Below, piece after piece: positions 9,136 to 58,437 of a stretch of 64,000 nucleotides of DNA. The stretch is from IMG/VR virus record IMGVR_UViG_3300032296_003307, positions 124,001-188,000 of that record; one strand, written 5' to 3'. Every line of letters starts with the position of its first letter. The first letter of the stretch is position 1. The notes under the pieces are model-generated. The model was not told where the DNA came from. It made no database searches and saw only the letters and a list, made by a program, of their open reading frames with translations. The translations under genes were made by a program, and so were the position numbers.

Positions 9136-9891
9136 ATGAACCTACAAGAAAACATATTAAGAATCAAAGAAGTAATGGGATTACTGTCTGAGGGAAAATC
9201 TGATAAACAGTTTTCAGGTAAAAATAGAATTATAATCATTGGACCACCAACAGTCGGAAAATCTACAGTTGCTGAAGAATTATCAAAACAACTCGGAATC
9301 GAATATGTTAAGTTAGACAAGTTACAAGAAAAAATAGGTCACGGTGATGGAAAAGAGTTGGAGTTAGTTAAAGAGGTACTATCAAACAAATTTGAAAAAT
9401 ACAACACACCATCCATATTAGATTTTGGTGGAGGACACGTCTATAATAAAGGAGTTAAAGGATTACTCAAAGATTATCCGAATGTAATATTGTTAATGCC
9501 GTCCAAGAACCAATCAAAGTCAGAAGAACTTTTAATGAAAGGAAACACCGAAAGATGGACAGGATTCATAGACCAAATAATTAAAGGGTTAAAAAGTGGA
9601 AAACACAATCATACAAAGGAAAAGGAATCTGAACTAATAGACAAACTGAAAAAGATGAAAAAGGGTGAAGGAGGAAAGTTCCACAAGAAAGATTTACCGA
9701 ACATACCTGAAATGAAAGGATGGGGAGGATTAAACTTGGATAAGGATTGGAACAAACATGTCCCTTTAACCAAAGAGGAGGATAGCATAAACAAAGAGAT
9801 TGCCAAACACACAGTTATTGTGTATGATAAGAATGGGGATAGAAAAACGCCATCAGAGATTGTAAAAGACATTAAAAAAATATTGAAATGA
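9136..9891 (+). CDS. Shikimate-kinase-like P-loop kinase with leader
   Basis: IIIIGPPTVGKSTVAEELS Walker A, D.D, and ILDFGGG, as in the aroK-like NMP kinase fold. Confidence 0.65.
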   Translation: MNLQENILRIKEVMGLLSEGKSDKQFSGKNRIIIIGPPTVGKSTVAEELSKQLGIEYVKLDKLQEKIGHGDGKELELVKEVLSNKFEKYNTPSILDFGGGHVYNKGVKGLLKDYPNVILLMPSKNQSKSEELLMKGNTERWTGFIDQIIKGLKSGKHNHTKEKESELIDKLKKMKKGEGGKFHKKDLPNIPEMKGWGGLNLDKDWNKHVPLTKEEDSINKEIAKHTVIVYDKNGDRKTPSEIVKDIKKILK

Positions 9892-10739
9892 GATTAAGAG
9901 AATCCATAAAAAGAATATTAGAGGAATACACAAAACAACTGAAAGATATGTTGGTTCCCGCAAATCCTAAAGGTAAATTACACCATTATTCAAGTTATCA
10001 AAACAGGGAAAGCATTCAAAAAAACGGTTTGATACCAAAAGTGGGGAGACAAACCACAAATTATATGTCAAAACAGTTTCCTGATGTTGAACCAATGCCA
10101 TTAATATTCACTCAAGACCCAAAACACGGTAATTTCTTCGGTGTTTATGGTAATGATATATGGGAAATAGATTTGAGCAAAGTAAATGCGAAGTGGTATC
10201 ATGACCCAATACATAAAGATGACGGAAACAATTGGGCGTTTTACGTCACGACAGACCCAATCCCACCATCGGCAATCAAACTAATTGGTTCAAATGAACA
10301 AAGAGATGATGACATGGAAGTTTATCGTCAGACAGGAAAGTTCCCAAACAGAAATGTGGAACCTGAAGAACCTAAAAAACCCGAAGAACCTGACATATGG
10401 GATGAAATATTGAGTCAAATCGGTGATGATGACTACATAACAATTCCTGCAGAGTATTTAAAAGAATCCACAAGAAGAACACTAAAGGAAATTACAAATC
10501 CAAATACCAAAAGAAGACATAATCAAATAAGACGACTTTTGATTATTATTTTGGAGAATTCAATAACTTGCGGTCCTGATTATGAACAGTATGAGAAATC
10601 TGTGCTTGATGACGTGGAAACGTTTATGAATGTTTTAGAAATAAAAGGACTAAGCGGACGTGAGGTAAAAGACCATATTGAAGAATATTTGATGTATTTT
10701 ATAAAGAGATATTACACCGAAGCCCAAGAAGATTGTTAA
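9888..10739 (+). CDS. ADP-ribosyltransferase/Tpt1-like domain plus C-terminal KRR..C module, with leader
   Basis: LHHYSSYQNRESIQKNGL...IFT...IWEIDL...IPPSAIKL pattern of His-type ART folds. Confidence 0.55.
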   Translation: MRLRESIKRILEEYTKQLKDMLVPANPKGKLHHYSSYQNRESIQKNGLIPKVGRQTTNYMSKQFPDVEPMPLIFTQDPKHGNFFGVYGNDIWEIDLSKVNAKWYHDPIHKDDGNNWAFYVTTDPIPPSAIKLIGSNEQRDDDMEVYRQTGKFPNRNVEPEEPKKPEEPDIWDEILSQIGDDDYITIPAEYLKESTRRTLKEITNPNTKRRHNQIRRLLIIILENSITCGPDYEQYEKSVLDDVETFMNVLEIKGLSGREVKDHIEEYLMYFIKRYYTEAQEDC

Positions 10740-10740
10740 T

Positions 10741-11289
10741 ATGAACCTACAAGAATCCATAAGAAGAATATTAAGGGAAGAATTAGAACATACTACATTT
10801 GAATCTTTTTTTTCAAAATACGGAGAAGATGTTTTGGAAATTATGAATAATCATTTTGATGAAGAAGTTACGATTAAAGAACTTGAAAAATATTATAATG
10901 ATGAAATTAAATATTTAAATAAAATAATAAACCAAAAACTACCAATATTTAGGTTAATAAAAGTTAATGATAATGTTTTAGAGAGTTTTATAAAATCAAA
11001 AAAAATTAAATCTGGTATATTTTGGACTTTAAATAAACAAGTAACAAAATATTGGGTATCTAGTGATTTATATGATGATAGATTTGAACTTGGTGGTGAC
11101 AATACTATTATTTTTGAGTCTGAATTATCTAATGAATTAGATATTGACATAGAAGGTACAATATTTGCTAGATTTACTTCATCATATGAAGATGAAATAA
11201 GGTTATTGGCAAATAACCCTATTAATATTAAAAATGTATTTGTTAATGGTAAAAAAATTAACATAGAAAATAAAATATTCATATCATAA
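10741..11289 (+). CDS. Possible R-S/T-E-type ADP-ribosyltransferase-like protein with leader
   Basis: LPIFR...GIFWTL...YEDEIRL motif spacing. Confidence 0.45.
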   Translation: MNLQESIRRILREELEHTTFESFFSKYGEDVLEIMNNHFDEEVTIKELEKYYNDEIKYLNKIINQKLPIFRLIKVNDNVLESFIKSKKIKSGIFWTLNKQVTKYWVSSDLYDDRFELGGDNTIIFESELSNELDIDIEGTIFARFTSSYEDEIRLLANNPINIKNVFVNGKKINIENKIFIS

Positions 11290-11744
11290 TGAACCTACAA
11301 GAATCCATAAGAAGAATATTAAAAGAAGAAATTGATTCAAAAGATATTAGTTCTTATTTGGATGTATCACCATTTTATAAATTACCATACCCATATCAAA
11401 AATCATTAATGATATTTAAAAATGAGGGAACTACAAATGATATGGAGATTAAAGATTTAATTGATGATGAGTTACAAACTTCTTTTAAAAGAAAAATGTA
11501 TTACTATGGAGTTGTCCCAATTAAATTAATAGAAGATGAGGTTACAGAACGATTAGGATGGGATAGTTTTGAGAATTACCATAAATGGTATGGTGATGAA
11601 GAAACGGACCACGGAGATTCGGTATTACCAATCATAATAGATTTTGATGATGAAGAATTAATTATAGATGGTTGGCACAGATTCCACTCCTATGTTAGAA
11701 AAGGATTAACTAAAATCCCAGTATTGGGTGTATACGTTGATTAA
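11289..11744 (+). CDS. ParB/Srx-like domain protein with leader
   Basis: LPIIID...IIDGWHRFHSYVRKGLTKIPV. Confidence 0.7.
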   Translation: MNLQESIRRILKEEIDSKDISSYLDVSPFYKLPYPYQKSLMIFKNEGTTNDMEIKDLIDDELQTSFKRKMYYYGVVPIKLIEDEVTERLGWDSFENYHKWYGDEETDHGDSVLPIIIDFDDEELIIDGWHRFHSYVRKGLTKIPVLGVYVD

Positions 11745-11745
11745 T

Positions 11746-12174
11746 ATGAACCTACAAGAAACCATAAGAAGAATATTAAGGGAAGAAACTTATTCACCTG
11801 CGGGGAAAGAATACACACCAGCAAGAGTTGTTGTTCATACATCAAATCCCGTTGTGAGAGATAATATAAAACTTACAGGGTTACAAGTTTCAGTTGGGGA
11901 ATGTTATCAAGTATACGTAAACAGAAACGAAACTAATCCCGATAAAATTAAATGTAAAAAAGCGATATTTGCCACGGATTCATTGAAAAATAGGGACATG
12001 TTTAATTCAACATATGACGATGATATTTGGTTGATTAATACTGAGTGTGCGAATGTTAAGTGGTATAAGGACAAACATTTTGATTACCCTGACTCAAAAC
12101 ACATAGTAACATTTGAAAACATATCACCTGAGTGTATCAAATTGATTCATAAAGGTACTGGTAAAAGTCGTTAA
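11746..12174 (+). CDS. ADP-ribosyltransferase/Tpt1-like protein with leader (paralog of 9888)
   Basis: VVHTSNPVVRDNIKLTGL...IFAT...DIWLI...KWYKD...ISPECIKL aligns by eye with 9888. Confidence 0.55.
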   Translation: MNLQETIRRILREETYSPAGKEYTPARVVVHTSNPVVRDNIKLTGLQVSVGECYQVYVNRNETNPDKIKCKKAIFATDSLKNRDMFNSTYDDDIWLINTECANVKWYKDKHFDYPDSKHIVTFENISPECIKLIHKGTGKSR

Positions 12175-13298: not shown

Positions 13299-14123
13299 AT
13301 GGACATTAATAGAATATATCATGAGGATTGTTTGAATACTATGAAGAATATGCCAAATAATTTTGTATCACTAACAGTTACCTCACCACCATATGATGAT
13401 TTAAGAACATATAATAATAAAGTTAAGGGTTTATCAACCGAATTCAACGGATACTCATTTGATTTTGAAAATATTGCACGAGAGTTATATCGTGTTACAA
13501 AATCTGGAGGTGTTGTGGTATGGGTAGTTGGGGATGCAACACACAATGGTTCAGAAACAGGAACATCTTTTAGACAGGCATTATTTTTTAAAGAGGTTGG
13601 ATTTAATATCCACGATACAATGATATACATGAAGAACAATTTTTCAAATCCTTCTTCTAATAGATATCATCAGATATTTGAGTATATGTTTGTTTTATCT
13701 AAAGGTAAACCAACAACATTTAATTCAATCAAAGACAGGAAGAATGTCTATGGAGGTCAAGTCGGTTCATGGGGTAAAAATACTGTTAGACAAAAGGACG
13801 GAACCATGAAGGAAAACACTAAAAAAGTAATAGAAGAATATGGTCAAAGATACAATGTTTGGCAATATAAAACATCTAAAAATGGACAAGAAGACGAGGT
13901 TGCTTACGAACATCCGGCAATATTCCCTATTGATTTGGTTAAAGACCACATTATTTCATGGACAAACCCTGGCGAAATAGTATATGACTGTTTTATGGGT
14001 AGCGGAACTACAGCAAAAGCAGCAACGGCATTAAATAGATTGTGGATTGGTTCTGAAATAAATGAAGAATATGTTGATATTTGCAACAGAAGACTCAATA
14101 GTATACAAACAGAAATAATTTAA
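13299..14123 (+). CDS. Beta-class DNA methyltransferase (N4-C/N6-A)
   Basis: Motif IV TSPPY precedes motif I DCFMGSGTT; HPAIFP..L and GSEINEEY also present. Confidence 0.93.
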   Translation: MDINRIYHEDCLNTMKNMPNNFVSLTVTSPPYDDLRTYNNKVKGLSTEFNGYSFDFENIARELYRVTKSGGVVVWVVGDATHNGSETGTSFRQALFFKEVGFNIHDTMIYMKNNFSNPSSNRYHQIFEYMFVLSKGKPTTFNSIKDRKNVYGGQVGSWGKNTVRQKDGTMKENTKKVIEEYGQRYNVWQYKTSKNGQEDEVAYEHPAIFPIDLVKDHIISWTNPGEIVYDCFMGSGTTAKAATALNRLWIGSEINEEYVDICNRRLNSIQTEII

Positions 14124-14998
14124 AAAGGGGTAGGGGATAATCAGTTCCCGGCTTCACACAGATTATACTAAAAGGTATTATACCATAAAGTATAACCATT
14201 CACTCATGGTGTTTCACTCCGTTCCACACATTCGTTCATAGTTATACTTTATTCCCCACTTAGTTAATCTATAGGTTTACTTCCGTACCTGTAATGTCAA
14301 GTTATATATTGACTTGTTTACAGTAACCTGTTTACTGTAAACTAATCGTATCGGTTATCGTATATTTACGTATCATTACGTATCAGATTCCCCCATCCTC
14401 ACGAGCCCCCATCATAAGAATGGTCCACAGGTGAGGGGTTCACCGATAATGTGGCTCAGTGGTTTATCATTTACGGCTCACAAAACCCTATGGGGTGAGC
14501 CAATTAGTAAACCACAGTGAGCCACAACACCGACATAGGTCATAATGGGACTTCATAGATAAGGTTGTCCCACATTCTACCACATCACTATTATACCCTA
14601 CTGAATGGACCAATTGAGGTCTTCATGATTGGGGTAAATGAGGGGGTCACATAACAAGGGACACGGTTGAAGAAGGGGTTTCTATCATAGGACTTCGTCT
14701 CCCCCACCTATGTTCCATTACTTACATTATTCTCTGGGAAACACATATAGTAAAAAAAGTGGTTCTAGTGATATCAGGAGAGGGGATTTTTTAGGTAGTT
14801 TCCCTTGTGGTGCTATCGTAAGGGGTAATTTATGGATGGGGTCTTAGTGGTGGTGGGAAAAAGTGGGGGAACCAAAACCCCGTAAAGGGATTGTGTAGTG
14901 TCGAGCGAGCAACTGACATTTTGACAAAATCAAGTTTTTCCCCCTATACTTATCCACATTCTCACATATATTTATGTGTATAAATTCCCCCTGACAAT

Positions 14999-15370
14999 AT
15001 GACAGAAGAAGTTATCCACATTTCAGGTTCCACAAATAATCCACATAAAGTGGGGGACCATAACTATGATTTATTGTTCCACACTTTTTTCACCCCTATC
15101 ATAGAACATAAGGATGGGGGAATAACCATTACATGGAAACTAAAGAAAGGACCATCCCATGTTCAGGGGTGGGTATATTTGGAACAACCAAAGAAGGGGT
15201 GGAAAAGAAAACCTATTATGACAAACCATTATACAATGACCAATACCAATCTCAACCGTATTCACGAGTTCATGGATAAGTATATTATCTACAAGAGTGA
15301 TTCACATGAAAGGGTTAAACGTTTCTTTCTAAATGAATCCATTAGATTGGTTAAGGAAGAAAAGGTTTAA
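14999..15370 (+). CDS. Hypothetical protein (start uncertain)
   Basis: 123-aa ORF whose 5' end overlaps DnaA boxes, so it may start later. Confidence 0.4.
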   Translation: MTEEVIHISGSTNNPHKVGDHNYDLLFHTFFTPIIEHKDGGITITWKLKKGPSHVQGWVYLEQPKKGWKRKPIMTNHYTMTNTNLNRIHEFMDKYIIYKSDSHERVKRFFLNESIRLVKEEKV

Positions 15371-15767
15371 TGTCCCTGTAACAGAGATTCCATACTTTCT
15401 CATATTCCCTTGCTTCAATCTCCATAGGGTGATTCCAATAACCATACTTCTGATACATCTTGTTGTATGTCTTCTCCCCCTTCTGTAGAGTGTGAGCGTA
15501 TTCATGAATAACAATGGCAATTAACTTACGTACACAGTTCCCCAACTCTGAAAAGGTATGGGGGTAAATTGTAATCCTATGGTTAGCATCCACGTAGTCA
15601 CCATAGAAGGGGTCAGTCTTAAACTTCTTCTTTGACACCTTAAGTTCAGGGAGACCCTTCTTCTTTTTAAACCCCATATTTTTGACACACCAATTAAAGG
15701 CAAGTTCCACAACAAGGGACGACTCCTTATGAGTTAAAGATGAGATGGGGGTATTACAATTAATCAT
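15351..15767 (-). CDS. SprT-like HExxH metallopeptidase
   Basis: FYGDY...ITIY...VIHEYAHTLQ...PMEIEAR; TACCTTTG promoter upstream. Confidence 0.75.
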   Translation of the reverse strand: MINCNTPISSLTHKESSLVVELAFNWCVKNMGFKKKKGLPELKVSKKKFKTDPFYGDYVDANHRITIYPHTFSELGNCVRKLIAIVIHEYAHTLQKGEKTYNKMYQKYGYWNHPMEIEAREYEKVWNLCYRDIKPFLP

Positions 15768-16215
15768 ACCACAAAGGTACTGAATAACTTTGACACTACC
15801 AAATTATTTTCTTCCCCCTATTATTGGGGCGAGCCGCCTCTGATTAAGCTTCAGTGAACGAGTCGTCCCCAGCCCTTGGTCCTCTATCCGATTTCCCACA
15901 ATACAAAGATAGTGAATAGGTATGGAATAAACTAATCCCCCATCCTAAGAGTTATCCACATCGACATGTTTATAAGTGGGGGGTCCATAAGTTATCCACA
16001 AAGGGGTGGGGGTAAAATGTGGATAAGTCCCCCCATACACCCCCCCCGTTATATGGGGGTGGGGGTCCCCCCTGTGACACCCTGTCAGGTATCCCCCCCC
16101 TCTCCCCCCGTCATTTTGTCAGTTTAGGGGGGTCAATACCTTCGATGAAATTTCTGGAAAAATTTTTGGGAAATTCGGTTTATATTTTAATTTAAATTTA
16201 TTAACATAAGGTGAC

Positions 16216-16890
16216 ATGGAAAAAAAAACTTACATTAGTCAGGAAGAATTGGACAGAATAATGTCATATATAAAATTGTGTGAGGATTGGAATTACTATA
16301 TAATACTTCATAATTTGGTTGTACACCAACGACATTTTAACGAACTTAAAGATACAAAACCTATTATACCTGAGGGGATTCCTATCCCTGAAAAAAACCC
16401 TTTTGAGATTACAATAAGAGCGGTTAATAAAAGATTAAAATTTTATCAATACAAACTTGGTTTAAAAGACATTAATTTATCCACCAAAATATTTTCAAAA
16501 AGGTTTGCTGTTAGTGGGAAAATATTTTACGGTATATTAAATACCGATAAAAATAGTTATAAAAAAACTGAAGAAGGTTATGTGTATATTGTAAAACACA
16601 GTCATAGAAATCCTGAAATATCCAAGCGATTAACCGATAAAAAAGTGGGTATTTCATTTGACTATACTCGAAGAATAAATGGTTTAACATTGGGGACCAT
16701 TGGTATTGAAGTGATAAGGGCGTGGAAAATGTCTTCACATATGGCAAGGTTTATGGAAAAAACAATACACAACGAATTAAAGGAATGCAGATTGGTTGGG
16801 GAGTGGTTTTCAGATGATGATGGGAAATTGGTTGGAGAAGTTGAGAAACTAATCGAGTTATATACCCCATCCTCGGTTGAAAACAAGTAA
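16216..16890 (+). CDS. GIY-YIG-like (T5orf172/Mug113-type) domain protein
   Basis: GYVYIV...KKVGIS...RRINGL...EKTIH...GEWF. Confidence 0.75.
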   Translation: MEKKTYISQEELDRIMSYIKLCEDWNYYIILHNLVVHQRHFNELKDTKPIIPEGIPIPEKNPFEITIRAVNKRLKFYQYKLGLKDINLSTKIFSKRFAVSGKIFYGILNTDKNSYKKTEEGYVYIVKHSHRNPEISKRLTDKKVGISFDYTRRINGLTLGTIGIEVIRAWKMSSHMARFMEKTIHNELKECRLVGEWFSDDDGKLVGEVEKLIELYTPSSVENK

Positions 16891-16893
16891 TCT

Positions 16894-17325
16894 ATGGATA
16901 AGATGAGTCATGTTTGGAAAACAGATAAACTTATATGTAAAGATATTTGTTTTGAGTGCGGTTCTGACTATGCAATTCATTTTCATCATGTTGTACCTAA
17001 ATCAAAAGGAGGGAAAAATGCAATACCATTATGTGAAAAATGTCATGGATTAGTTCATAACAGGAAATTCAATGAACACAGAAAGTTACAGATGGAAGGA
17101 ATTGAAAGGGCTAAATTAAATGGTACGTATAAGGGAAGAAAATGTGATACACCTGAGACACCTGAAAAATTTATGGGAAAAGAAAAAATACAAAAGGTAA
17201 TGATTGAATTATTGGCAGGTAAAAAAGGTACTGTTATATCTAAAGAAATAAATGTACATATAAATACCATCTCAAAGGTGAGAAAATATATGGTAAATTA
17301 CCCTGATTTGGTTCCCCATCCCTAA
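16894..17325 (+). CDS. HNH endonuclease with resolvase-like C-terminal helix/HTH
   Basis: CFECG...HFHHVVPKSKGG...LCEKCHGLVH, then EGIERAKLNGTYKGRK and a terminal HTH-like segment. Confidence 0.8.
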   Translation: MDKMSHVWKTDKLICKDICFECGSDYAIHFHHVVPKSKGGKNAIPLCEKCHGLVHNRKFNEHRKLQMEGIERAKLNGTYKGRKCDTPETPEKFMGKEKIQKVMIELLAGKKGTVISKEINVHINTISKVRKYMVNYPDLVPHP

Positions 17326-17425: not shown

Positions 17426-17920
17426 ATGAAAAAGGTTGTAAGATTAACCGAGTCTGATTTACTTAGGGTTGTTAAAAGGGTTCTTAAAGAAGAATATACT
17501 CCTGAGAAAGAAAGTGAGTATTACAAATTAACCCTTCAAAGAGATTTCATTAAATCCCAATTAGATTCTTTAAGTAAGAGATATGAAGAAATATCTGAAA
17601 GATTAAATAAAATAGAATTACTTTACCATCCAAAATTAATAATAAGTTTTGTAAAGGGTAAACGAGGAGAAAAAGGGGATAGATACTCGGGTAGAATTAT
17701 GATTCCAAACAAATACAGGATGAATCCTAAAAGTGAAAACGAAAGATTCTACTCTATAGTTTCATCACCAAAAAACGCTTCTGAATATACAGGCAAGGAT
17801 GACCCCAAATTAATTAAAGATTTAACAAATGAATTTAGAAAAAAATTCTCAAACCCCAAGTGGTTAGATTTGTTAAACTTCAACCCTGATGATATATTGT
17901 TTGATAAAAATATAAATTAA
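17426..17920 (+). CDS. Leader-bearing hypothetical protein
   Basis: MKKVVRLTESDLLRVVKRVLKEE. Confidence 0.8.
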   Translation: MKKVVRLTESDLLRVVKRVLKEEYTPEKESEYYKLTLQRDFIKSQLDSLSKRYEEISERLNKIELLYHPKLIISFVKGKRGEKGDRYSGRIMIPNKYRMNPKSENERFYSIVSSPKNASEYTGKDDPKLIKDLTNEFRKKFSNPKWLDLLNFNPDDILFDKNIN

Positions 17921-17927
17921 ATAATTT

Positions 17928-17958
17928 AAACCCCATCCTTCAACAGGTGGGGTTTTTT
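17928..17958 (+). terminator. Intrinsic terminator
   Basis: AAACCCCA/TGGGGTTT stem followed by a T tract. Confidence 0.75.
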
Positions 17959-18104
17959 GTTTTTCCCAAAAAAACTTTTCAATCTGAAATATACCCCATT
18001 TTCAAAAAAAAATTTCCGGAAAAATTTTCAGAAAATTGACTATCTTTGTTCCTTGGGAAAATAAATTTAATCCTTCTTAATGGTTGGGGGAGTATTTATT
18101 GTTT

Positions 18105-18491
18105 ATGAAAAAGGTTGTTATTCTCACAGAATCCGAATTGGTAAATTTAATTGAAAAAATTATTGAAGATAAAAACACTTCCGTAATTGAGGAAGGTTGG
18201 TTTGGTGACATGATTGAGGATATACAATATAATCTTAAATTTTATCTTGGAATTGGTCTTTTATTGTCCTATGGTGTTTTTTCGGGAATTAAGATTTATG
18301 AAAAATCACAGGAACTATCAGGTGAGGAATATTATATGAAGATTTTAAAACCCGCACTTAAACTTCAGGGAAAGAAAAAACTATCTGAATTATCTGATGA
18401 GGTTGGGGAAAAAGATATTTTAATGTATATTCAGCAAAACCCCGATGAGTTTGCCATTGGTGAGAATGGGGAGATTTTCTACAAGGACTAA
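18105..18491 (+). CDS. Leader-bearing protein with one hydrophobic segment
   Basis: MKKVVILTESELVNLIEKIIED; FYLGIGLLLSYGVFSGI. Confidence 0.8.
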   Translation: MKKVVILTESELVNLIEKIIEDKNTSVIEEGWFGDMIEDIQYNLKFYLGIGLLLSYGVFSGIKIYEKSQELSGEEYYMKILKPALKLQGKKKLSELSDEVGEKDILMYIQQNPDEFAIGENGEIFYKD

Positions 18492-18569
18492 TCTTTTTGT
18501 TTCTGATGCCGGAAACGGTTCCCGAATCCCCCGACCCCCTTTTTTTATTTTGGTTGATATTTATAATTT

Positions 18570-18833
18570 ATGAAAAGTATAAGTAAAATAAGACATATCC
18601 AAGAATCAAATTTTAAATTGGAAAAAAGAATTTTATCTGAAGAAGACGAAACCCAATCTATGATGGATGTTTCCTCTGATTCAGATTGGTATCAAAAAAG
18701 AAAACAAGATGTGTCAATCGCTCAAAACGACCTATCAACAATTTTATCCATTGCTTACAGATGGTGCAAAGGTAAGGAAAATTTGCCTGACTGTCAGAAT
18801 GTTAATTCATTGTATATGAAACATTATCTATAA
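18570..18833 (+). CDS. Leader-bearing hypothetical protein
   Basis: MKSISKIRHIQESNFKLEKRILSEE. Confidence 0.75.
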   Translation: MKSISKIRHIQESNFKLEKRILSEEDETQSMMDVSSDSDWYQKRKQDVSIAQNDLSTILSIAYRWCKGKENLPDCQNVNSLYMKHYL

Positions 18834-18849
18834 TAAATTTTTATATCGT

Positions 18850-19374
18850 ATGAAAAAGATTGTAAGATTAAATGAATCCGATTTGATTCGTATTGTTAAA
18901 AGGGTTCTTAAAGAAAATTTGGAATCAAGACCAAATATGATTAGAGTTAGATTAACCCCCGAATTGGAAGAAACAATGATGGAAAGAAATAAGATGGGGG
19001 GAATAGATTTTAATACTGAAATGGATTTAATTTCTGGTATGTGGTACAAAATCGGTCAGGGTCGAGGTAATTTTCACTCTCAAAATTATGAACCCCAATC
19101 GTTTTTCTTTTCAAAATATAAACCAAATCAAAATGAAATTTATACCATGGAAGTTAGATGTCAAGGTAGAGTTCATACCGACATGGCTAAACAGTTAACT
19201 CTTATGTTTGATGAAAGGTTTAATAATTTTCTTAGTAGTGAAAATCCGTACGATAGGTGCTATGATGCGGGTGGATTTTACTCAAAGTTTGAAACTAGAG
19301 ATGGAAAACCAAATTTTGATGTTGGTGAACAAGACCATAGAGGCTATTTTGAAATAACCAAAACTAGCGATTAA
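18850..19374 (+). CDS. Leader-bearing hypothetical protein
   Basis: MKKIVRLNESDLIRIVKRVLKE. Confidence 0.8.
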   Translation: MKKIVRLNESDLIRIVKRVLKENLESRPNMIRVRLTPELEETMMERNKMGGIDFNTEMDLISGMWYKIGQGRGNFHSQNYEPQSFFFSKYKPNQNEIYTMEVRCQGRVHTDMAKQLTLMFDERFNNFLSSENPYDRCYDAGGFYSKFETRDGKPNFDVGEQDHRGYFEITKTSD

Positions 19375-19390
19375 TTGATATTTATATTAT

Positions 19391-19729
19391 ATGAAAAAGA
19401 TTGTTAAACTTAAAGAAGCTGACTTATATAACATTGTTCGTAAAACAATAAACGAAATGGATGGTAATAAGGGTGACTCAATGGATGATTTTTTTAAACA
19501 ATTGAATGATGTTTTGGAGATATACCAAAAAATTGATGATTTGAAAGTAAATCATCTCGATGGTTCTGATTCCGCTGAAAATTATTTAAAATTAAACATA
19601 ATGTATTCCGATATTTTATATAAACTACAAGAAAAAATTTTTCCTAATCGTTTAAAAGTTTTTAATGAGTTGGGTGATAAAGTTAATTATTACGGCAACT
19701 TGTACAATAAGAAAAAAGACGAAATGTAA
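19391..19729 (+). CDS. Leader-bearing hypothetical protein
   Basis: MKKIVKLKEADLYNIVRKTINE. Confidence 0.8.
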   Translation: MKKIVKLKEADLYNIVRKTINEMDGNKGDSMDDFFKQLNDVLEIYQKIDDLKVNHLDGSDSAENYLKLNIMYSDILYKLQEKIFPNRLKVFNELGDKVNYYGNLYNKKKDEM

Positions 19730-19739
19730 TACACTTGAT

Positions 19740-19768
19740 AACCCCCTTCTTTAAGTTGGGGGTTTTTT
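19740..19768 (+). terminator. Intrinsic terminator (near-identical to 22517)
   Basis: AACCCCC-ttctttaagtt-GGGGGTT followed by a T tract. Confidence 0.75.
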
Positions 19769-19789
19769 ATTTCCGCATATTTATTCTAT

Positions 19790-20143
19790 ATGAAAATTAT
19801 TATTGCTGAGAGTCAATTAAAAAAATTTATTGAAGATAAATTGGGTCTTGACCTTGGTGATAAAATTCACATGATAACAAGTAAGTATGACTTGCCAAGA
19901 GAATTTCATTATGCCTTTGCTGGAGATGCCAGATTTTTTAATCAATCTCTAAATTACTTTGGACCAATGTATATGATTGAAACTCCTGACGGAAAATTTT
20001 TATATCACAATAGAAACGGAAAAATAAGAATTTATGATGAAAACGATACTCAAAATTTATCACCAAGAGATGTTTTTCGGTCACTTGGGATTAGTCCGTA
20101 TTGGGGTTTTGATATTGATGATTTGATTAACATTTATTTTTGA
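19790..20143 (+). CDS. Leader-bearing hypothetical protein
   Basis: MKIIIAESQLKKFIED. Confidence 0.8.
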   Translation: MKIIIAESQLKKFIEDKLGLDLGDKIHMITSKYDLPREFHYAFAGDARFFNQSLNYFGPMYMIETPDGKFLYHNRNGKIRIYDENDTQNLSPRDVFRSLGISPYWGFDIDDLINIYF

Positions 20144-20203
20144 CACCGGAAACCGTTTTAAATTCCCCCAACCCCCTTTTTTATTTGATTATATTTATTG
20201 ATA

Positions 20204-20563
20204 ATGTACTTAAGGGGTCTAATTAAAAAAGTTATTAACGAGGAACTAAAAATACCTACCGATTTTGGACCTGTTTATTGGAAGGTACCAAAACATATTC
20301 GGGATGATATTGGTGTAAGACTTGCCAAAGAAGAAGATGTCTTATATTTGCAGGAAATTCATTTTGATACATCTGTGGTTTTATTGATGCCTTATGCCAA
20401 AGATGAAACCGGTGAAGAATATGCTTATTCGGATTTGAATCCGCATTGGCATTTGTATCCAACAGAGTATCGTATTCCATTTAAAAAAATCCCACCAAGT
20501 TTGATGAATTTTATTAGACGTAGACTACCATCCGAATATTTTGAATATATGAACTTTTCTTGA
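20204..20563 (+). CDS. Leader-bearing hypothetical protein
   Basis: MYLRGLIKKVINEE. Confidence 0.75.
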   Translation: MYLRGLIKKVINEELKIPTDFGPVYWKVPKHIRDDIGVRLAKEEDVLYLQEIHFDTSVVLLMPYAKDETGEEYAYSDLNPHWHLYPTEYRIPFKKIPPSLMNFIRRRLPSEYFEYMNFS

Positions 20564-20577
20564 GATATTTATTATGT

Positions 20578-21006
20578 ATGAAAAAGATTGTTAAATTAAC
20601 CGAATCTGATTTGCTTAGAATTGTTAAACGAGTTATAAAAGAAGAATATGGAAAATCGTATTCAATTGAATCCTTATACGACGTTATAAAAGATGAATTA
20701 ATAAATGACCAAGCCGTACAAGATTGGATTAAATTCACGGAGTCTATGGGAGCCTTGAATGATTTTATGGTCGATGATGATGGTGTTGGAATTGCTGACC
20801 GTGCTGAATTGGAAGGAGATACTTTGGGTGTTACAGGAAACGTTAGCATTTTGTCCGCAACCATTCTACCCATCTTGGTTAGATTGGGAATCACAAACAA
20901 ATCAAAATTAAAATCAAACCCTGAGGAAATGGATATGGTAAATCATATTGCCAAATTATTATATTCGGACATAAAACCTGACTATAATCCTCATGGTGAT
21001 TTATAA
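20578..21006 (+). CDS. Leader-bearing hypothetical protein
   Basis: MKKIVKLTESDLLRIVKRVIKEE. Confidence 0.8.
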   Translation: MKKIVKLTESDLLRIVKRVIKEEYGKSYSIESLYDVIKDELINDQAVQDWIKFTESMGALNDFMVDDDGVGIADRAELEGDTLGVTGNVSILSATILPILVRLGITNKSKLKSNPEEMDMVNHIAKLLYSDIKPDYNPHGDL

Positions 21007-21028
21007 TTTAAAGTAATATTTATATCAT

Positions 21029-21400
21029 ATGAAAAAGGTTGTTAGATTAACTGAATCAGATTTAATTAGATTGGTTAAAAAAATTATAAAAGAAGAGGAG
21101 GGTGAATCATCAGTTGAATCGATTAAAGATGAAATTGACGGAAAATTTAATACTCACCGTCGTATATTTCTTATGGATTTACAAAATGGTAAAGTAAAAT
21201 CTGATGAAGGTTTAAAAAATTACCATAATAAATTTGATGATAGCATGGCAAATTTTTTCCAAAATTTAAGGAATGAGGGAATATTAACACCTGATAGTAA
21301 TGAATTCCAAGAAGTTTTCCAACATTTTTTTTCAAAAAGCAATCAATTTTATGATTTAATTCAAGATGCTCATAAAAAACATAAAATGCGTAATAATTAA
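21029..21400 (+). CDS. Leader-bearing hypothetical protein
   Basis: MKKVVRLTESDLIRLVKKIIKEE. Confidence 0.8.
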   Translation: MKKVVRLTESDLIRLVKKIIKEEEGESSVESIKDEIDGKFNTHRRIFLMDLQNGKVKSDEGLKNYHNKFDDSMANFFQNLRNEGILTPDSNEFQEVFQHFFSKSNQFYDLIQDAHKKHKMRNN

Positions 21401-21411
21401 TTTTTAAAAAA

Positions 21412-21750
21412 ATGAAAAAGGTAGTTAGATTAACAGAAAGCCAATTAGTAAAATTTGTTAAAAGAGTTTTGGCAGAACAAGGTATGGAACCTGAATTGGA
21501 AAATAAACCCAAAAATAGACCTATTAATTTTGATAAAATCAAAAACAAGTTTGATAAATTCTTGGACGACTTGAGTTCACAAGGTAATGTGGATAAAGGT
21601 AGATTTTTAAAAGATGTTGATAAAGAAATAAGAGCATATTATCATAGCCGTTTAAACGATGATAATTCAAACGTAGGTAATTTTGCGGAAAAACATGCTG
21701 AAGTAATCCAACACTTCAGAGACAGGTTCAACAGCGAAAAAATAAGTTGA
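21412..21750 (+). CDS. Leader-bearing hypothetical protein
   Basis: MKKVVRLTESQLVKFVKRVLAEQ. Confidence 0.8.
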   Translation: MKKVVRLTESQLVKFVKRVLAEQGMEPELENKPKNRPINFDKIKNKFDKFLDDLSSQGNVDKGRFLKDVDKEIRAYYHSRLNDDNSNVGNFAEKHAEVIQHFRDRFNSEKIS

Positions 21751-21762
21751 TATTTATATACT

Positions 21763-22494
21763 ATGAAAAAAATTATCAAATTAACCGAATCAGATTTATT
21801 TAAAATTGTTAAAAAAGTTATTTTAGAATCTACCGATACAATTGGCGGTGAATTAACTTATATAAAGGATATTGAAAACGGGATAAAGGTTTATGGTAAA
21901 AACTATGGTGACTATACAATTTATGTTATGGTCTTCAAAGTTAAAGATAAAGATGGTACTCCACGTATGATAGCTAAAGTACAGGGAACACCTACTGATG
22001 GAAAAGAAAATTATTTTCCTACTGTTGGTTCACCTGAAGATAAAAAAGGTGGTTTTATTTATATTAATGACTTGAATGACCCAATATTAACACAAAAATA
22101 TATTCCGATGGTTCATAATAAGTTTGGTAATCCTCAAACACCAACACCACCAACGCAAGATTCAATTGCCGGAGAATTAAAATTTAAAGAAGAAAAAAAC
22201 GGAATTAAACTTTACTCAAACAAATATAGAGATTATGCAATTAAAGTTCTTGTTAGAAATGTAACAAAAAAAGATGGAACACTAATAACCATAGCCAAGG
22301 TTATGTCAATAATAAACAGACCAATGGTGTCTAATGCCGAAGAGTATAACCCGACTGAAGGGTCATCAGACGATATAGGAAATGGTTATATTGTAATAAA
22401 CGATTTAAATGACCCAAAATTAATGAAATATATTTCAATGGTTCGCAAACAAGTGGAACTTTATAGAAAATGGGATGATTTACCAAAACTATAA
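21763..22494 (+). CDS. Leader-bearing protein with internally duplicated ~100-aa domain
   Basis: MKKIIKLTESDLFKIVKKVILES; two copies of GEL...NGIK.Y...Y.DY.I.V...KKDGT...IAKV...INDLNDP.L. Confidence 0.8.
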   Translation: MKKIIKLTESDLFKIVKKVILESTDTIGGELTYIKDIENGIKVYGKNYGDYTIYVMVFKVKDKDGTPRMIAKVQGTPTDGKENYFPTVGSPEDKKGGFIYINDLNDPILTQKYIPMVHNKFGNPQTPTPPTQDSIAGELKFKEEKNGIKLYSNKYRDYAIKVLVRNVTKKDGTLITIAKVMSIINRPMVSNAEEYNPTEGSSDDIGNGYIVINDLNDPKLMKYISMVRKQVELYRKWDDLPKL

Positions 22495-58216: not shown

Positions 58217-58219
58217 CTG

Positions 58220-58307
58220 TGGAAGGTGAGGGGCTCGAACCCTCGCGCCGGTCACCCGACCTAACAGTTTAGCAAACTGTCCCCTTCACCAACTTGGGTA
58301 ACCTTCC
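58220..58307 (-). tRNA. tRNA-Ser(GCT)
   Basis: GGAAGGT/ACCTTCC acceptor stem, ACAGT-TTGCTAA-ACTGT anticodon arm, long variable arm, GGTTCGAG T-loop. Confidence 0.92.
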
Positions 58308-58334
58308 AAAAAAAATCCCGACCTAGCTCGGGAT
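58308..58334 (-). terminator. Terminator-like hairpin between the two tRNA genes
   Basis: ATCCCGA/TCGGGAT followed by an 8-T tract on the minus strand. Confidence 0.55.
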
Positions 58335-58349
58335 AACACATTGGATTTG

Positions 58350-58437
58350 CGGAAGCTGAGGGATTCGAACCCCCGGACCCCGTTAAGGGTCTTCAGTTTT
58401 CAAGACTGACGCGATAGACCAACTCTGCCAAACTTCC
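58350..58437 (-). tRNA. tRNA-Ser(TGA)
   Basis: GGAAGTT/AGCTTCC acceptor stem, TCAGT-CTTGAAA-ACTGA anticodon arm, long variable arm, GGTTCGAAT, G discriminator. Confidence 0.92.

What the first reader, a model, noticed from the sequence alone, without database searches (positions are those of the whole stretch)
14950..16026. Five perfect DnaA boxes in 1.1 kb of a phage genome
Seen: TTATCCACA at 14950, 15012, 15952 and 15992, and its reverse at 16018. They form two clusters about 930 bp apart, with the last two as an inverted pair 17 bp apart. A rough estimate at about 30% GC gives under one chance copy in the whole window. Established: TTATCCACA is the bacterial DnaA R-box consensus. Inference: an oriC-like phage origin that uses host DnaA, or a datA-like sink that titrates DnaA to stall host replication. 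Gene strand bias does not switch here, so bidirectional origin function is not established.
Basis: partly seen in the sequence, partly recalled or inferred. Interest (0 to 1): 0.75.

Follow-up and report, generated by a model that had tools for sequence, protein, structure and literature searches.

The report
Host DnaA boxes in jumbo phage
An uncultured freshwater jumbo phage carries a real, selected cluster of binding sites for the bacterial replication initiator DnaA inside a one-per-genome non-coding control region shared by a whole phage clade, so these phages probably use host DnaA, most likely to start replication or gate early transcription.

Summary
TTATCCACA occurs five times in 14950-16026, against 1.2 expected in the 64-kb window and 9 in the 268.7-kb genome (P about 1e-11). 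It is the only DnaA-box cluster in the genome.

The boxes lie in a 2.1-kb, GC-rich, mostly non-coding, single-copy region (14124-16215). Two elements, E1 and E2, bracket a swappable small-gene cassette there. This framework is conserved in at least 21 lineages of freshwater phages, probably with Bacteroidota hosts.

The boxes are not private to this phage. All five lineages with related cassettes keep box 1 fused to a -10-like hexamer 23 nt after a TTGACA, with an inverted partner 15-16 nt on. Fourteen other lineages carry TTATTAACA at that position. In Bacteroidota chromosomes TTATCCACA, TTATCAACA and TTATTAACA replace one another in tandem pairs (38 of 201 genomes, control 0). Three of six inspected pairs lie upstream of rpmH.

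So these are very probably DnaA sites. An origin role is plausible: the phage has a DnaB-type helicase, and no initiator or loader was detected. It is unproven: there is no significant skew step and no exceptional AT tract. DnaA gating of the E1 promoter is the main rival. A dedicated datA-like sink is unlikely.

The parts
14124..14886 (+). Conserved non-coding block upstream of E1, with G/C runs and small hairpins kept by compensatory changes. Candidate structured leader or ncRNA, or single-strand DNA signals.
   Evidence: Alignments (for example GACAT..ATGTC, GTCCT..AGGAC and ACAC..GTGT). No Rfam match. RNAalifold on the whole block predicted nothing.
14887..14926 (+). Element E1 core: GGGATTGTGTA, 15 nt, then CTGACATTTTGACA. 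Single copy in the genome.
   Evidence: One search shows it is unique. The same core is in 35 metagenome loci and in L011 and L023.
14921..14950 (+). Sigma-70-like promoter match, TTGACA-18 nt-TATACT (11 of 12). Its last T is the first T of box 1.
   Evidence: The TATAC/TATAG fusion with the box is kept in L047, L104, L101-103, L028, L049 and L037.
14950..14958 (+). DnaA box 1, TTATCCACA, 23 nt after TTGACA.
   Evidence: It is unchanged in metagenomes X2 and X3. TTATTAACA sits at the same +23/+25 position in 14 of 19 lineages.
14975..14983 (-). Inverted partner of box 1, TTATACACA, after a 16-nt spacer.
   Evidence: The partner is a perfect TGTGGATAA in L101-103 and is TGTGTATAA in L104.
14992..15004 (+). 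TGACA-N3-TGACA repeat that overlaps the ORF123 start codon.
   Evidence: the direct form occurs only twice in 268 kb, here and at 14914.
14999..15370 (+). ORF123, a small protein of unknown function. Box 2 lies in its codons 5-7.
   Evidence: Homologues at 60-90% identity. Five of 7 population variants fall at third codon positions. No Pfam or Atlas lead.
15012..15020 (+). DnaA box 2, TTATCCACA.
   Evidence: It is perfect in L104, and is ATATCCACA in L047, X2 and L101.
15037..15045 (+). Near-box TAATCCACA.
15351..15767 (-). ORF138, a small HExxH zinc metallopeptidase of the SprT/YgjP/DUF3920 type.
   Evidence: Atlas model pTM 0.91 and phage-wide clusters. A 53%-identical homologue is in L037.
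15897..15911 (-). Conserved block whose reverse complement reads TATCTTTGTATTG, a Bacteroidota-type TAnnTTTG promoter-like element pointing left.
   Evidence: The TAnnTTTG-N4-ATG class is described.
15952..15960 (+). DnaA box 3.
   Evidence: L101 has TTATTAACA and L104 has TTGTCCACA at this place.
15992..16000 (+). DnaA box 4.
   Evidence: Unchanged in X3.
16018..16026 (-). DnaA box 5, which forms an inverted pair with box 4 across a 17-nt spacer.
   Evidence: It lies 71 nt before the E2 core, where several other lineages carry TTATTAACA.
16029..16139 (+). Element E2: C and G runs, the palindrome TGACAcccTGTCA (16075), GTATCCCCCCCC (16089), GTCATTTTGTCA (16110) and GGGGGGTCAAT (16127).
   Evidence: It is conserved in 20 or more loci.
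16140..16215 (.). A/T-tract segment (GGAAAAATTTTTGGGAAA type) after E2. It is a possible unwinding or UP-like element.
   Evidence: AT content is 76%, the 89th percentile for the genome. The equivalent tract reaches about 300 bp in L011.
13299..14123 (+). Flank: N6/N4 DNA methyltransferase, an accessory gene.
   Evidence: PF01555, 2.8e-43. Its depth is about 10 times lower than the core region in X2.
16216..17325 (+). Flank: two free-standing homing-endonuclease-type genes (T5orf172/MUG113 type, then HNH), inserted just after E2.
   Evidence: Low depth in X2. In L028 the B-family gene follows E2 directly.

Best explanation
The five boxes are genuine binding sites for host DnaA. They are built into a single-copy, clade-conserved, non-coding control region.

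Layout of the region. E1 is a TGACATTTTGACA repeat followed by a promoter-like element. A swappable cassette of one or two small genes follows. E2 consists of G/C runs, a second TGACA-type repeat and an A/T tract. Arrays of small early-type genes surround the whole.

Most likely mechanism (inferred). The region is the phage's DnaA-assisted start site for replication. DnaA docks on the strong boxes and spreads onto weaker TTATACACA or TTATTAACA-type sites. Together with whatever binds the TGACA repeats, and with transcription from E1, it opens the DNA near E2. It then recruits the phage's own DnaB-type helicase, for which the phage encodes no recognisable initiator or loader.

What is shown: the sites, their non-randomness, their conservation and their fixed positions. 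Also shown: TTATCCACA and TTATTAACA are equivalent in the likely host phylum, this is the only such cluster in the genome, and no phage DnaA or DnaC was detected.

What is inferred: DnaA binding itself, the host phylum, and the origin function.
For: Statistics. This is the only cluster of TTATYMACA sites in the genome, 6 in 1.5 kb against 2 for the next best window.

The region is unique in the genome. It has the densest G5/C5 runs, 24 of 123. It holds both genomic copies of TGACA-N3-TGACA. In the relative G001 the 13-mer TGACATTTTGACA occurs exactly twice in 257 kb, at E1 and at E2. The region is single copy.

Conservation. The E1 pattern found 35 metagenome loci. Strict boxes number 11 in 24.6 kb of E1-E2 intervals and 0 in 93 kb of flanks. 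Box 1 and its inverted partner are kept in every lineage with a related cassette. The 112-nt stretch from E1 to the ATG is 80-89% identical where the adjacent coding sequence is 68%. TTATTAACA sits at +23/+25 in 14 of 19 lineages and recurs before E2. Strong and TTATTAACA forms are mixed within one lineage, including a tandem pair with a 2-nt spacer.

Host. There is no Shine-Dalgarno signal, and TAnnTTTG-N4-ATG starts occur. The nearest cultured relative by helicase is a Flavobacterium phage, at 57% identity.

Bacteroidota chromosomes. Tandem TTATYMACA-NN-TTATYMACA pairs occur in 38 of 201 genomes, with 0 for the control, and all three variants are mixed within pairs. Three of six inspected pairs lie upstream of rpmH, and in two further regions (L229, L230) TTATCCACA, TTATCAACA and TTATTAACA co-occur within about 300 nt.

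Replication genes. A DnaB_C helicase lies at genome position 68.4 kb. No DnaA domains were found and no DnaC/IstB hit passed the cut-off.
Against: There is no significant GC-skew step at the site: 0.089 at 141 kb, a value reached by the maximum of 32% of block shuffles. The largest step is at 64-71 kb, next to the helicase gene. Gene orientation does not switch.

The A/T tract next to E2 is not exceptional, there are no GATC sites, and no iteron array of three or more units is present. No initiator-like gene lies nearby.

The replication genes lie about 70 kb away. Box 1 sits exactly on a promoter-like -10 element, which suits plain transcriptional control equally well. Most lineages have only the weak-looking TTATTAACA form.

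No expression or replication data could be obtained. The 'RNA' runs look like DNA, and all runs are available only as contigs.
Confidence: 0.4

Rival explanations
1. Pure transcriptional gating or insulation. DnaA bound at box 1 and its inverted partner represses or roadblocks the E1 promoter. The second cluster controls the leftward promoter-like element at 15897-15911 and read-through at E2. This would tie early cassette expression to the host's DnaA-ATP level, that is, to its growth state, with no role in replication.
For: Box 1 shares its first T with the -10-like hexamer of the best sigma-70-type match in the region. That fusion is kept in all five strong-box lineages. TTATTAACA holds the same position in front of the FAM0 gene in other lineages. 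DnaA is an established repressor and transcription roadblock in E. coli (own knowledge).
Against: In L028 and L037 the E1 promoter plus boxes face the 3' ends of minus-strand genes, so no plus-strand gene is there to be controlled. TTGACA is not a general promoter element of this phage: 0.6% of upstream regions carry it against 0.9% of controls. A simple promoter does not explain why the site is unique in the genome or why its sequence is so strongly conserved.
Confidence: 0.3
2. Not DnaA at all. The TTAT(C/T)(C/A)ACA sites would be bound by a phage-encoded or other host protein, or would be promoter or structural elements. Identity with the DnaA consensus would then be coincidental.
For: The motif has an extended flank (AGTTATCCACAT) and sits among other phage-specific repeats. 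TTATTAACA partly overlaps the phage-wide ATATTTAT motif in some lineages. No binding data exist.
Against: The exact 9-mer consensus recurs in five lineages. Its variants stay within known DnaA-box space (TTATACACA, TTGTCCACA, TTATCAACA). The same variant mix and 2-nt tandem spacing are found in Bacteroidota chromosomes, with tandem pairs upstream of rpmH and mixed-variant clusters, and the control gives zero. No phage protein with a DnaA domain IV was found.
Confidence: 0.12
3. A T5-iss-like site. DnaA boxes in a large untranslated, repeat-rich region would hold or pause the incoming genome at the membrane, or anchor it there, rather than start replication.
For: In T5-like phages, two sets of boxes 1.8-4.3 kb apart lie in a large untranslated region, and TTATCCACA, TTATCAACA and TTATTAACA interchange among relatives (preprint 10.1101/866236). 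That is the same variant pattern seen here. The region lies between arrays of small early-type paralogous genes.
Against: There is no sequence similarity to any deposited phage. The pair geometry differs: spacers of 16-17 bp in inverted pairs, against 3 bp in T5. There is no evidence that the region lies near a physical genome end. The T5 model itself is untested.
Confidence: 0.08
4. A datA- or DARS-like device that manipulates the host DnaA pool, either as a sink or as a nucleotide-exchange site, to stall or deregulate host replication.
For: There are 5-7 boxes per genome, multiplied by phage copy number. Inverted (head-to-head) pairs are present.
Against: No IHF consensus was found. Box 1 keeps a strictly fixed position relative to E1 in all lineages, which a sink does not need. 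Most lineages carry only one to three weak-type sites.
Confidence: 0.05

Closest known systems
DnaA-box arrays in the untranslated iss region of T5-like phages (preprint 10.1101/866236)
   Same: Both are lytic phages with a large repeat-rich untranslated region. Both have two groups of boxes separated by a variable 1-4 kb. In both, consensus boxes and TTATCAACA/TTATTAACA variants occupy equivalent positions in different relatives. In both, the function is not demonstrated.
   Different: There is no sequence homology. In T5 the boxes are in pairs 3 bp apart inside defined inverted repeats within the terminal repeat. Here the pairs are inverted with 16-17 bp spacers, box 1 is fused to a promoter-like hexamer, and no link to a genome end is known.
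Iteron-type origins with auxiliary DnaA boxes (P1 oriR, F oriS, RK2 oriV; own knowledge)
   Same: DnaA boxes flank element-specific repeats next to an A/T-rich stretch. P1 oriR even has a 2 + 3 split of five boxes.
   Different: Those origins are 250-400 bp long, have five or more iterons and sit beside their Rep gene. Here the two groups are about 930 bp apart around a gene cassette, only two or three TGACA-N3-TGACA units exist, and no Rep-like gene was found.
Bacteroidota chromosomal DnaA-box pairs, some upstream of rpmH
   Same: The same box family is used (TTATCCACA, TTATCAACA, TTATTAACA, often preceded by AG). The same tandem 2-nt spacing appears in lineage L101.
   Different: The chromosomal sites are bacterial origin or dnaA-promoter regions. 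The phage region has its own framework (E1, E2, G/C runs) and no dnaA, dnaN or rpmH neighbours.
E. coli datA (own knowledge)
   Same: About five boxes within roughly 1 kb, outside a proven origin.
   Different: datA needs an IHF site and acts by DnaA-ATP hydrolysis. No IHF consensus was found here, and the boxes keep fixed positions on promoter-like elements.
PeSL mobile regulatory cassettes of T4-type phages (PMC2839356, PMC4122927)
   Same: Conserved non-coding motifs bracket small variable ORFs that are exchanged among related phages.
   Different: PeSLs occur in many copies per genome and carry no DnaA boxes. E1 and E2 occur once each per genome.

Membership tests
oriC-type DnaA-dependent origin | Cluster of DnaA boxes | tested here: met
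   Five perfect boxes plus two near-boxes in 1.1 kb. It is the only cluster in the genome.
oriC-type DnaA-dependent origin | Adjacent, exceptionally AT-rich unwinding element with repeats | tested here: inconclusive
   Positions 16136-16215 are 76% AT, the 89th percentile for the genome. Relatives have longer A/T tracts. No clear 13-mer-type repeats were seen.
oriC-type DnaA-dependent origin | Switch of strand compositional skew or gene orientation at the site | tested here: not met
   Gene strand does not switch. The step of 0.089 at 141 kb is not significant, and the largest step is at 64-71 kb.
oriC-type DnaA-dependent origin | Supports DnaA-dependent initiation | not testable with these tools
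   This needs replication assays. Only contigs of public runs were available.
Iteron-type origin with auxiliary DnaA boxes | Array of three or more directly repeated iterons plus a neighbouring initiator gene | tested here: not met
   Only two direct TGACA-N3-TGACA units and one palindromic unit were found. No Rep-like domain is in the neighbouring ORFs.
datA-type DnaA sink | Four or more boxes within about 1 kb | tested here: met
datA-type DnaA sink | IHF site between the boxes | tested here: not met
   No WATCAANNNNTTR match on either strand. This is the E. coli consensus, and the host's own consensus is unknown.
T5 iss-type region | Boxes in a large untranslated, repeat-rich region, with consensus and TTATCAACA/TTATTAACA variants interchanging among relatives | tested here: met
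   compared with the paper read.
T5 iss-type region | Box pairs 3 bp apart inside the IRC/IRD inverted repeats | tested here: not met
   Pairs here are inverted with 16-17 bp spacers. There is no DNA similarity to any phage record.
T5 iss-type region | Location in the terminal repeat near the first-injected end | not testable with these tools
   The contig has no end repeats and the region is single copy. No raw reads were available to map termini.
PeSL-type mobile regulatory cassette | Many copies per genome of the flanking motif | tested here: not met
   The E1 and E2 cores occur once each. TGACATTTTGACA occurs twice in G001.
PeSL-type mobile regulatory cassette | Variable small ORFs exchanged between the conserved motifs | tested here: met
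   Different cassette gene families lie between E1 and E2 in different lineages. The cassette has 2-10 times the depth of its flanks in other metagenomes.

The most novel reading that the evidence does not exclude
A whole clade of lytic freshwater jumbo phages, probably of Flavobacteriia, has no initiator of its own. Instead it borrows host DnaA at a single E1-E2 site to load a phage-encoded DnaB-type helicase. Lineages would tune their dependence by switching between weak (TTATTAACA) and strong (TTATCCACA) boxes. More broadly, inverted DnaA-box pairs with 12-17 bp spacers would be a widespread, so far undescribed phage cis-element. At least 119 IMG/VR contigs carry one, and recurrent neighbouring gene families include small and large terminase.
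Probability: 0.2. Interest if true: 0.75.

Novelty: new variant of a known kind. Interest (0 to 1): 0.6.

Why it matters
How jumbo phages start replication, and how far they depend on host initiation proteins, is largely unknown. This is especially true for the abundant uncultured freshwater phages of Bacteroidota.

A conserved, single-copy DnaA-box site gives a concrete, testable candidate for such a host dependency. It could be an origin, or a DnaA-read growth-state switch.

The result also indicates that TTATTAACA and TTATCAACA act as DnaA-box variants in Bacteroidota. That would help origin prediction in that phylum.

The high frequency of phased inverted box pairs in viral contigs suggests that phages use DnaA more widely than the λ, P1 and T5 examples imply.

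Tried and rejected
- DNA similarity searches found nothing for the region in deposited phages or plasmids.
- No structured RNA or tRNA was found. Rfam gave no match and ARAGORN found no tRNA in the region. RNAalifold predicted nothing on the 390-nt block upstream of E1. E2 does not fold better than shuffled sequence, with z-scores from -1.5 to +1.4.
- Transposon hypothesis: the 13-nt inverted repeat around boxes 1 and 5 might mark transposon ends. Rejected, because in L028 and L037 only the 9-mer itself is shared.
- Linkage to the ORF138 peptidase gene was rejected. Only L037 has a true homologue.
- 'Regulator swap' hypothesis: the FAM0 protein of box-less lineages might be the DNA binder that DnaA replaces. 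It has no support. The fold is confident (pLDDT 88) but matches no DNA-binding fold and nothing else in the PDB, and there is no Pfam or Atlas lead.
- Host inference from the methyltransferase failed. Its homologues are scattered over many phyla.
- RNA evidence was not obtained. The two 'RNA' runs are flagged as probably DNA, and all runs are held only as contigs, so neither transcription nor termini could be read.
- GC-skew origin mapping gave no significant signal.
- Link to the packaging site: the terminase-like genes lie at 25 kb and 228 kb, far from the region.
Full report
**Observation**

The window holds 7 copies against 1.2 expected, and no shuffle reaches 7.

The window is bases 124001-188000 of a 268,739-bp IMG/VR virus record with 32.4% GC and a CheckV completeness of 100%. 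That record holds only 9 copies. Five or more in 1,077 bp has a Poisson P of about 1e-11.

One-mismatch variants across the window are at chance level, so only the cluster is unusual. Two more box-like sites belong to it: TTATACACA on the minus strand at 14975 and TAATCCACA at 15037. When the wider family TTAT(C/T)(C/A)ACA is counted, this is still the only cluster in the genome, with 6 sites in 1.5 kb against 2 for the next best window.

**Anatomy of the region**

The boxes lie in a 2.1-kb stretch, 14124-16215, that is unlike the rest of the genome.
- It has about 40% GC against about 31% around it.
- It is mostly non-coding.
- It holds 24 of the genome's 123 runs of five or more G or C.
- It is single copy.

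Two conserved elements stand out. E1 (14887-14926) ends in CTGACATTTTGACA. It is followed by the best sigma-70-type promoter match in the region, TTGACA-18 nt-TATACT, and the last T of that hexamer is the first T of box 1. E2 (16029-16139) is a block of C and G runs. It contains a TGACAcccTGTCA palindrome, GTATCCCCCCCC, GTCATTTTGTCA and GGGGGGTCAAT, and an A/T tract follows it.

The direct repeat TGACA-N3-TGACA occurs only twice in 268 kb, and both copies are in this region.

Between E1 and E2 lie two small convergent genes.
- ORF123 has no known function. It looks like a real gene, because 5 of 7 population variants fall at third codon positions.
- ORF138 is a small HExxH metallopeptidase of a family found across many phages.

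A DNA methyltransferase lies upstream. Two homing-endonuclease-type genes lie immediately downstream.

The wider neighbourhood consists of two arrays of small paralogous genes. Each array has its own conserved N-terminus.

**Relatives**

Deposited phages and plasmids give no DNA match. Two IMG/VR relatives, L011/G001 and L023, share the non-coding framework.

A scan of metagenome contigs with the E1 pattern found 35 loci, mostly from freshwater. Homologues of ORF123 led to four more loci.

E2 is recognisable in more than 20 loci. In G001 the 13-mer TGACATTTTGACA occurs exactly twice in 257 kb, once in E1 and once in E2.

The genes between E1 and E2 differ from lineage to lineage. In two independent lake metagenomes the contigs covering the cassette have 2-10 times the depth of those covering the methyltransferase and the endonuclease genes. 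So the flanks are accessory insertions. The E1-cassette-E2 unit is the shared part, and it is exchanged among strains.

**Are the boxes conserved?**

Strict TTATCCACA occurs 11 times in 24.6 kb of E1-E2 intervals across 19 dereplicated lineages. It does not occur at all in 93 kb of their flanks.

All five lineages with related cassettes keep box 1 fused to TATAC or TATAG at the same distance from TTGACA. These are the window phage with L047, L104, L101-103, L028 with L049, and L037. All five also keep an inverted partner 15-16 nt further on, which is a perfect TGTGGATAA in L101-103.

The 112-nt stretch from E1 to the ATG is 80-89% identical between lineages whose adjacent coding sequence is only 68% identical. 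Boxes 1, 3, 4 and 5 are unchanged in the metagenomes X2 and X3. Box 2 varies to ATATCCACA.

In 14 of the 19 lineages the position of box 1 (+23 to +25 after TTGACA) holds TTATTAACA instead. The same 9-mer recurs about 75-100 nt before E2 in several lineages. It is seven times denser inside the E1-E2 intervals than outside them.

Strong and TTATTAACA forms also co-occur within one lineage. L101 has TTATTAACA-N7-TGTGGATAA where the window phage has box 3. It also has a tandem TTATTAACA pair with a 2-nt spacer before E2.

**Is TTATTAACA a DnaA box?**

The host is probably a Bacteroidota.
- There is no Shine-Dalgarno signal upstream of genes.
- Several genes have a TAnnTTTG-N4-ATG start.
- The phage's DnaB-type helicase is closest, at 57% identity, to that of a Flavobacterium phage.

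In a sample of 81 Bacteroidota genomes, 19 have tandem perfect boxes within 31 nt, against 0 for the reversed control. The usual form is TTATCCACA-AG-TTATCCACA.

With the degenerate pattern, 38 of 201 genomes have a pair with a 2-nt spacer, again with 0 for the control. The pairs freely mix TTATCCACA, TTATCAACA and TTATTAACA.

Six of these pairs were inspected. Three lie about 150-190 nt upstream of a gene whose product begins MKRTFQPS, which is ribosomal protein L34 (rpmH; read from the sequence, identity from my own knowledge). One of those three lies just upstream of dnaA, and two lie at the end of what appears to be a complete chromosome contig. Two further regions (L229, L230) combine TTATCCACA, TTATCAACA and a TTATTAACA tandem within about 300 nt.

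So the three 9-mers are interchangeable members of one site family in the likely host phylum. The phage clade as a whole therefore carries DnaA-type sites at fixed positions in E1 and before E2. The window phage has the high-affinity version, in extra copies.

The preprint on T5-like phages reports the same three variants at equivalent positions of their untranslated iss region (10.1101/866236).

**What does it do?**

The phage has no DnaA domain and no DnaC/IstB-type loader above the cut-off. It does have a DnaB-family helicase at 68.4 kb.

The combination points to a nucleoprotein start site where host DnaA opens DNA and recruits the phage helicase:
- a single DnaA-box cluster in the genome;
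- phage-specific repeats that occur nowhere else;
- a promoter-like element;
- an A/T tract.

I hold this with a confidence of 0.4. The classical origin signatures are missing or weak.
- Gene strand does not switch.
- The GC-skew step at 141 kb (0.089) is only the second largest inside the co-oriented block and is not significant. The largest step is at 64-71 kb, beside the helicase gene.
- There are no GATC sites and no IHF consensus, and the A/T tract is only at the 89th percentile.
- There is no iteron array and no Rep-like gene.

The main rival, at 0.3, is that DnaA simply gates the E1 promoter and insulates the cassette. The box-on-hexamer fusion fits this well. It explains less well why E1 plus its boxes are kept in L028 and L037, where no plus-strand gene follows.

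The other rivals are less likely:
- a binder other than DnaA (0.12);
- a T5-iss-like entry or anchoring site (0.08);
- a datA- or DARS-like manipulator of the host DnaA pool (0.05).

**Context and novelty**

My rough chance estimate is a few tens, assuming tens of gigabases of sequence (own estimate, not a tool result).

The spacers are not uniformly distributed. They peak at 14-15 nt and mostly range from 12 to 17 nt, and 63% of these pairs have further boxes within 1 kb. Recurrent neighbouring gene families in those contigs include small and large terminase genes and an AAA_25 primase/helicase-type protein.

DnaA-box pairs in viral contigs are therefore common. The 16-17-nt inverted pairs seen here fit that wider pattern. 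No paper in the searched library mentions both DnaA boxes and jumbo phages.

I file the finding as a new variant of a known kind: phage or plasmid control regions that recruit DnaA. It is distinguished by its framework (E1, E2, G/C runs), its cassette, its clade-wide conservation and its likely Bacteroidota host.

**Limits**

The host phylum, DnaA binding and every functional statement are inferences. No raw reads, true RNA data or termini could be examined. The E1 pattern used for the metagenome scan biases the sample toward lineages that keep that pattern. The loci found through ORF123 show that further lineages exist.

Noticed in passing
window 9888-12174 and 17426-22494: Two arrays of small paralogous genes flank the region. 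Family A starts MNLQESI and family B starts MKK(I/V)V(R/K)LTESDL. Each family shares only a conserved stretch of about 25 N-terminal residues. The same families occur in L011.
   Followed up: partly
window 16216-17325; L101 3998-4468: Free-standing homing-endonuclease-type genes sit immediately after E2 in the window phage (T5orf172/MUG113 type plus HNH). In L101 a different cysteine-rich 156-aa ORF holds that position; I did not check what it is. In other metagenomes the window phage's endonuclease genes have much lower depth than the core, so E2 may be a homing target.
   Followed up: partly
window 14540-14900 and homologous parts of L011, L023, L046 and others: About 350 nt of non-coding sequence upstream of E1 is conserved across the clade. 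Small hairpins in it are kept by compensatory changes, and the G-T wobbles fall on the plus strand. It may be an unrecognised structured RNA or a set of single-strand DNA signals. Rfam and RNAalifold gave nothing.
   Followed up: partly
whole genome (G000): The motif ATATTTAT lies upstream of 21% of genes (1% in controls), most often 5 nt before the ATG. TAnnTTTG lies 4 nt before the ATG in 8 genes. Shine-Dalgarno motifs are not enriched. This suggests leaderless or near-leaderless transcripts and a Bacteroidota-type host.
   Followed up: partly
G000 63-71 kb: The largest GC-skew step inside the co-oriented gene block lies next to the DnaB-type helicase gene at 68.4 kb. It is reached by 8% of block shuffles. 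It is an alternative place to look for an origin, but no DnaA-box cluster is there.
   Followed up: partly
L105-L223 (IMG/VR contigs): Convergent pairs of perfect DnaA boxes are frequent in viral contigs: at least 119, with the scan truncated. Their spacers peak sharply at 14-15 nt. The recurrent neighbouring gene families include a small terminase (12 loci, median distance 30 nt) and two large-terminase families (12 and 9 loci, median distances 715 and 290 nt).
   Followed up: partly
Bacteroidota genomes G002-G203; L226-L231: Tandem pairs TTATYMACA-NN-TTATYMACA occur in 38 of 201 genomes, usually once per genome, with zero control matches. Three of six inspected pairs lie upstream of rpmH. 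TTATCAACA and TTATTAACA therefore look like regular DnaA-box variants in this phylum. One genome, G043, has 18 such pairs.
   Followed up: partly
L023 11348-11638 and 28 other loci: FAM0 is a protein of about 97 aa that follows E1 in the lineages lacking strong boxes. Its model is confident (pLDDT 88: four strands plus helices) but matches nothing significant in the PDB. It has no Pfam or Atlas relatives.
   Followed up: yes
window 18528, 19742, 20165, 22519, 53751: Typical intrinsic terminators of this phage are CCCCC-loop-GGGGG hairpins followed by a T run. They occur between the small family-B genes.
   Followed up: no
window 58219-58437 (minus strand); G000 199.9-210 kb: Two tRNA-Ser genes lie in the window. 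Sequences resembling tRNA T-arms suggest a larger tRNA cluster further along the genome.
   Followed up: no
window 16029-16109: Five C runs of 6-8 nt on the plus strand, and so G runs on the minus strand, could form an i-motif or G-quadruplex, or stabilise an R-loop under leftward transcription. The run pattern CCCTCCCGTATCCCCCCC is conserved in relatives.
   Followed up: no
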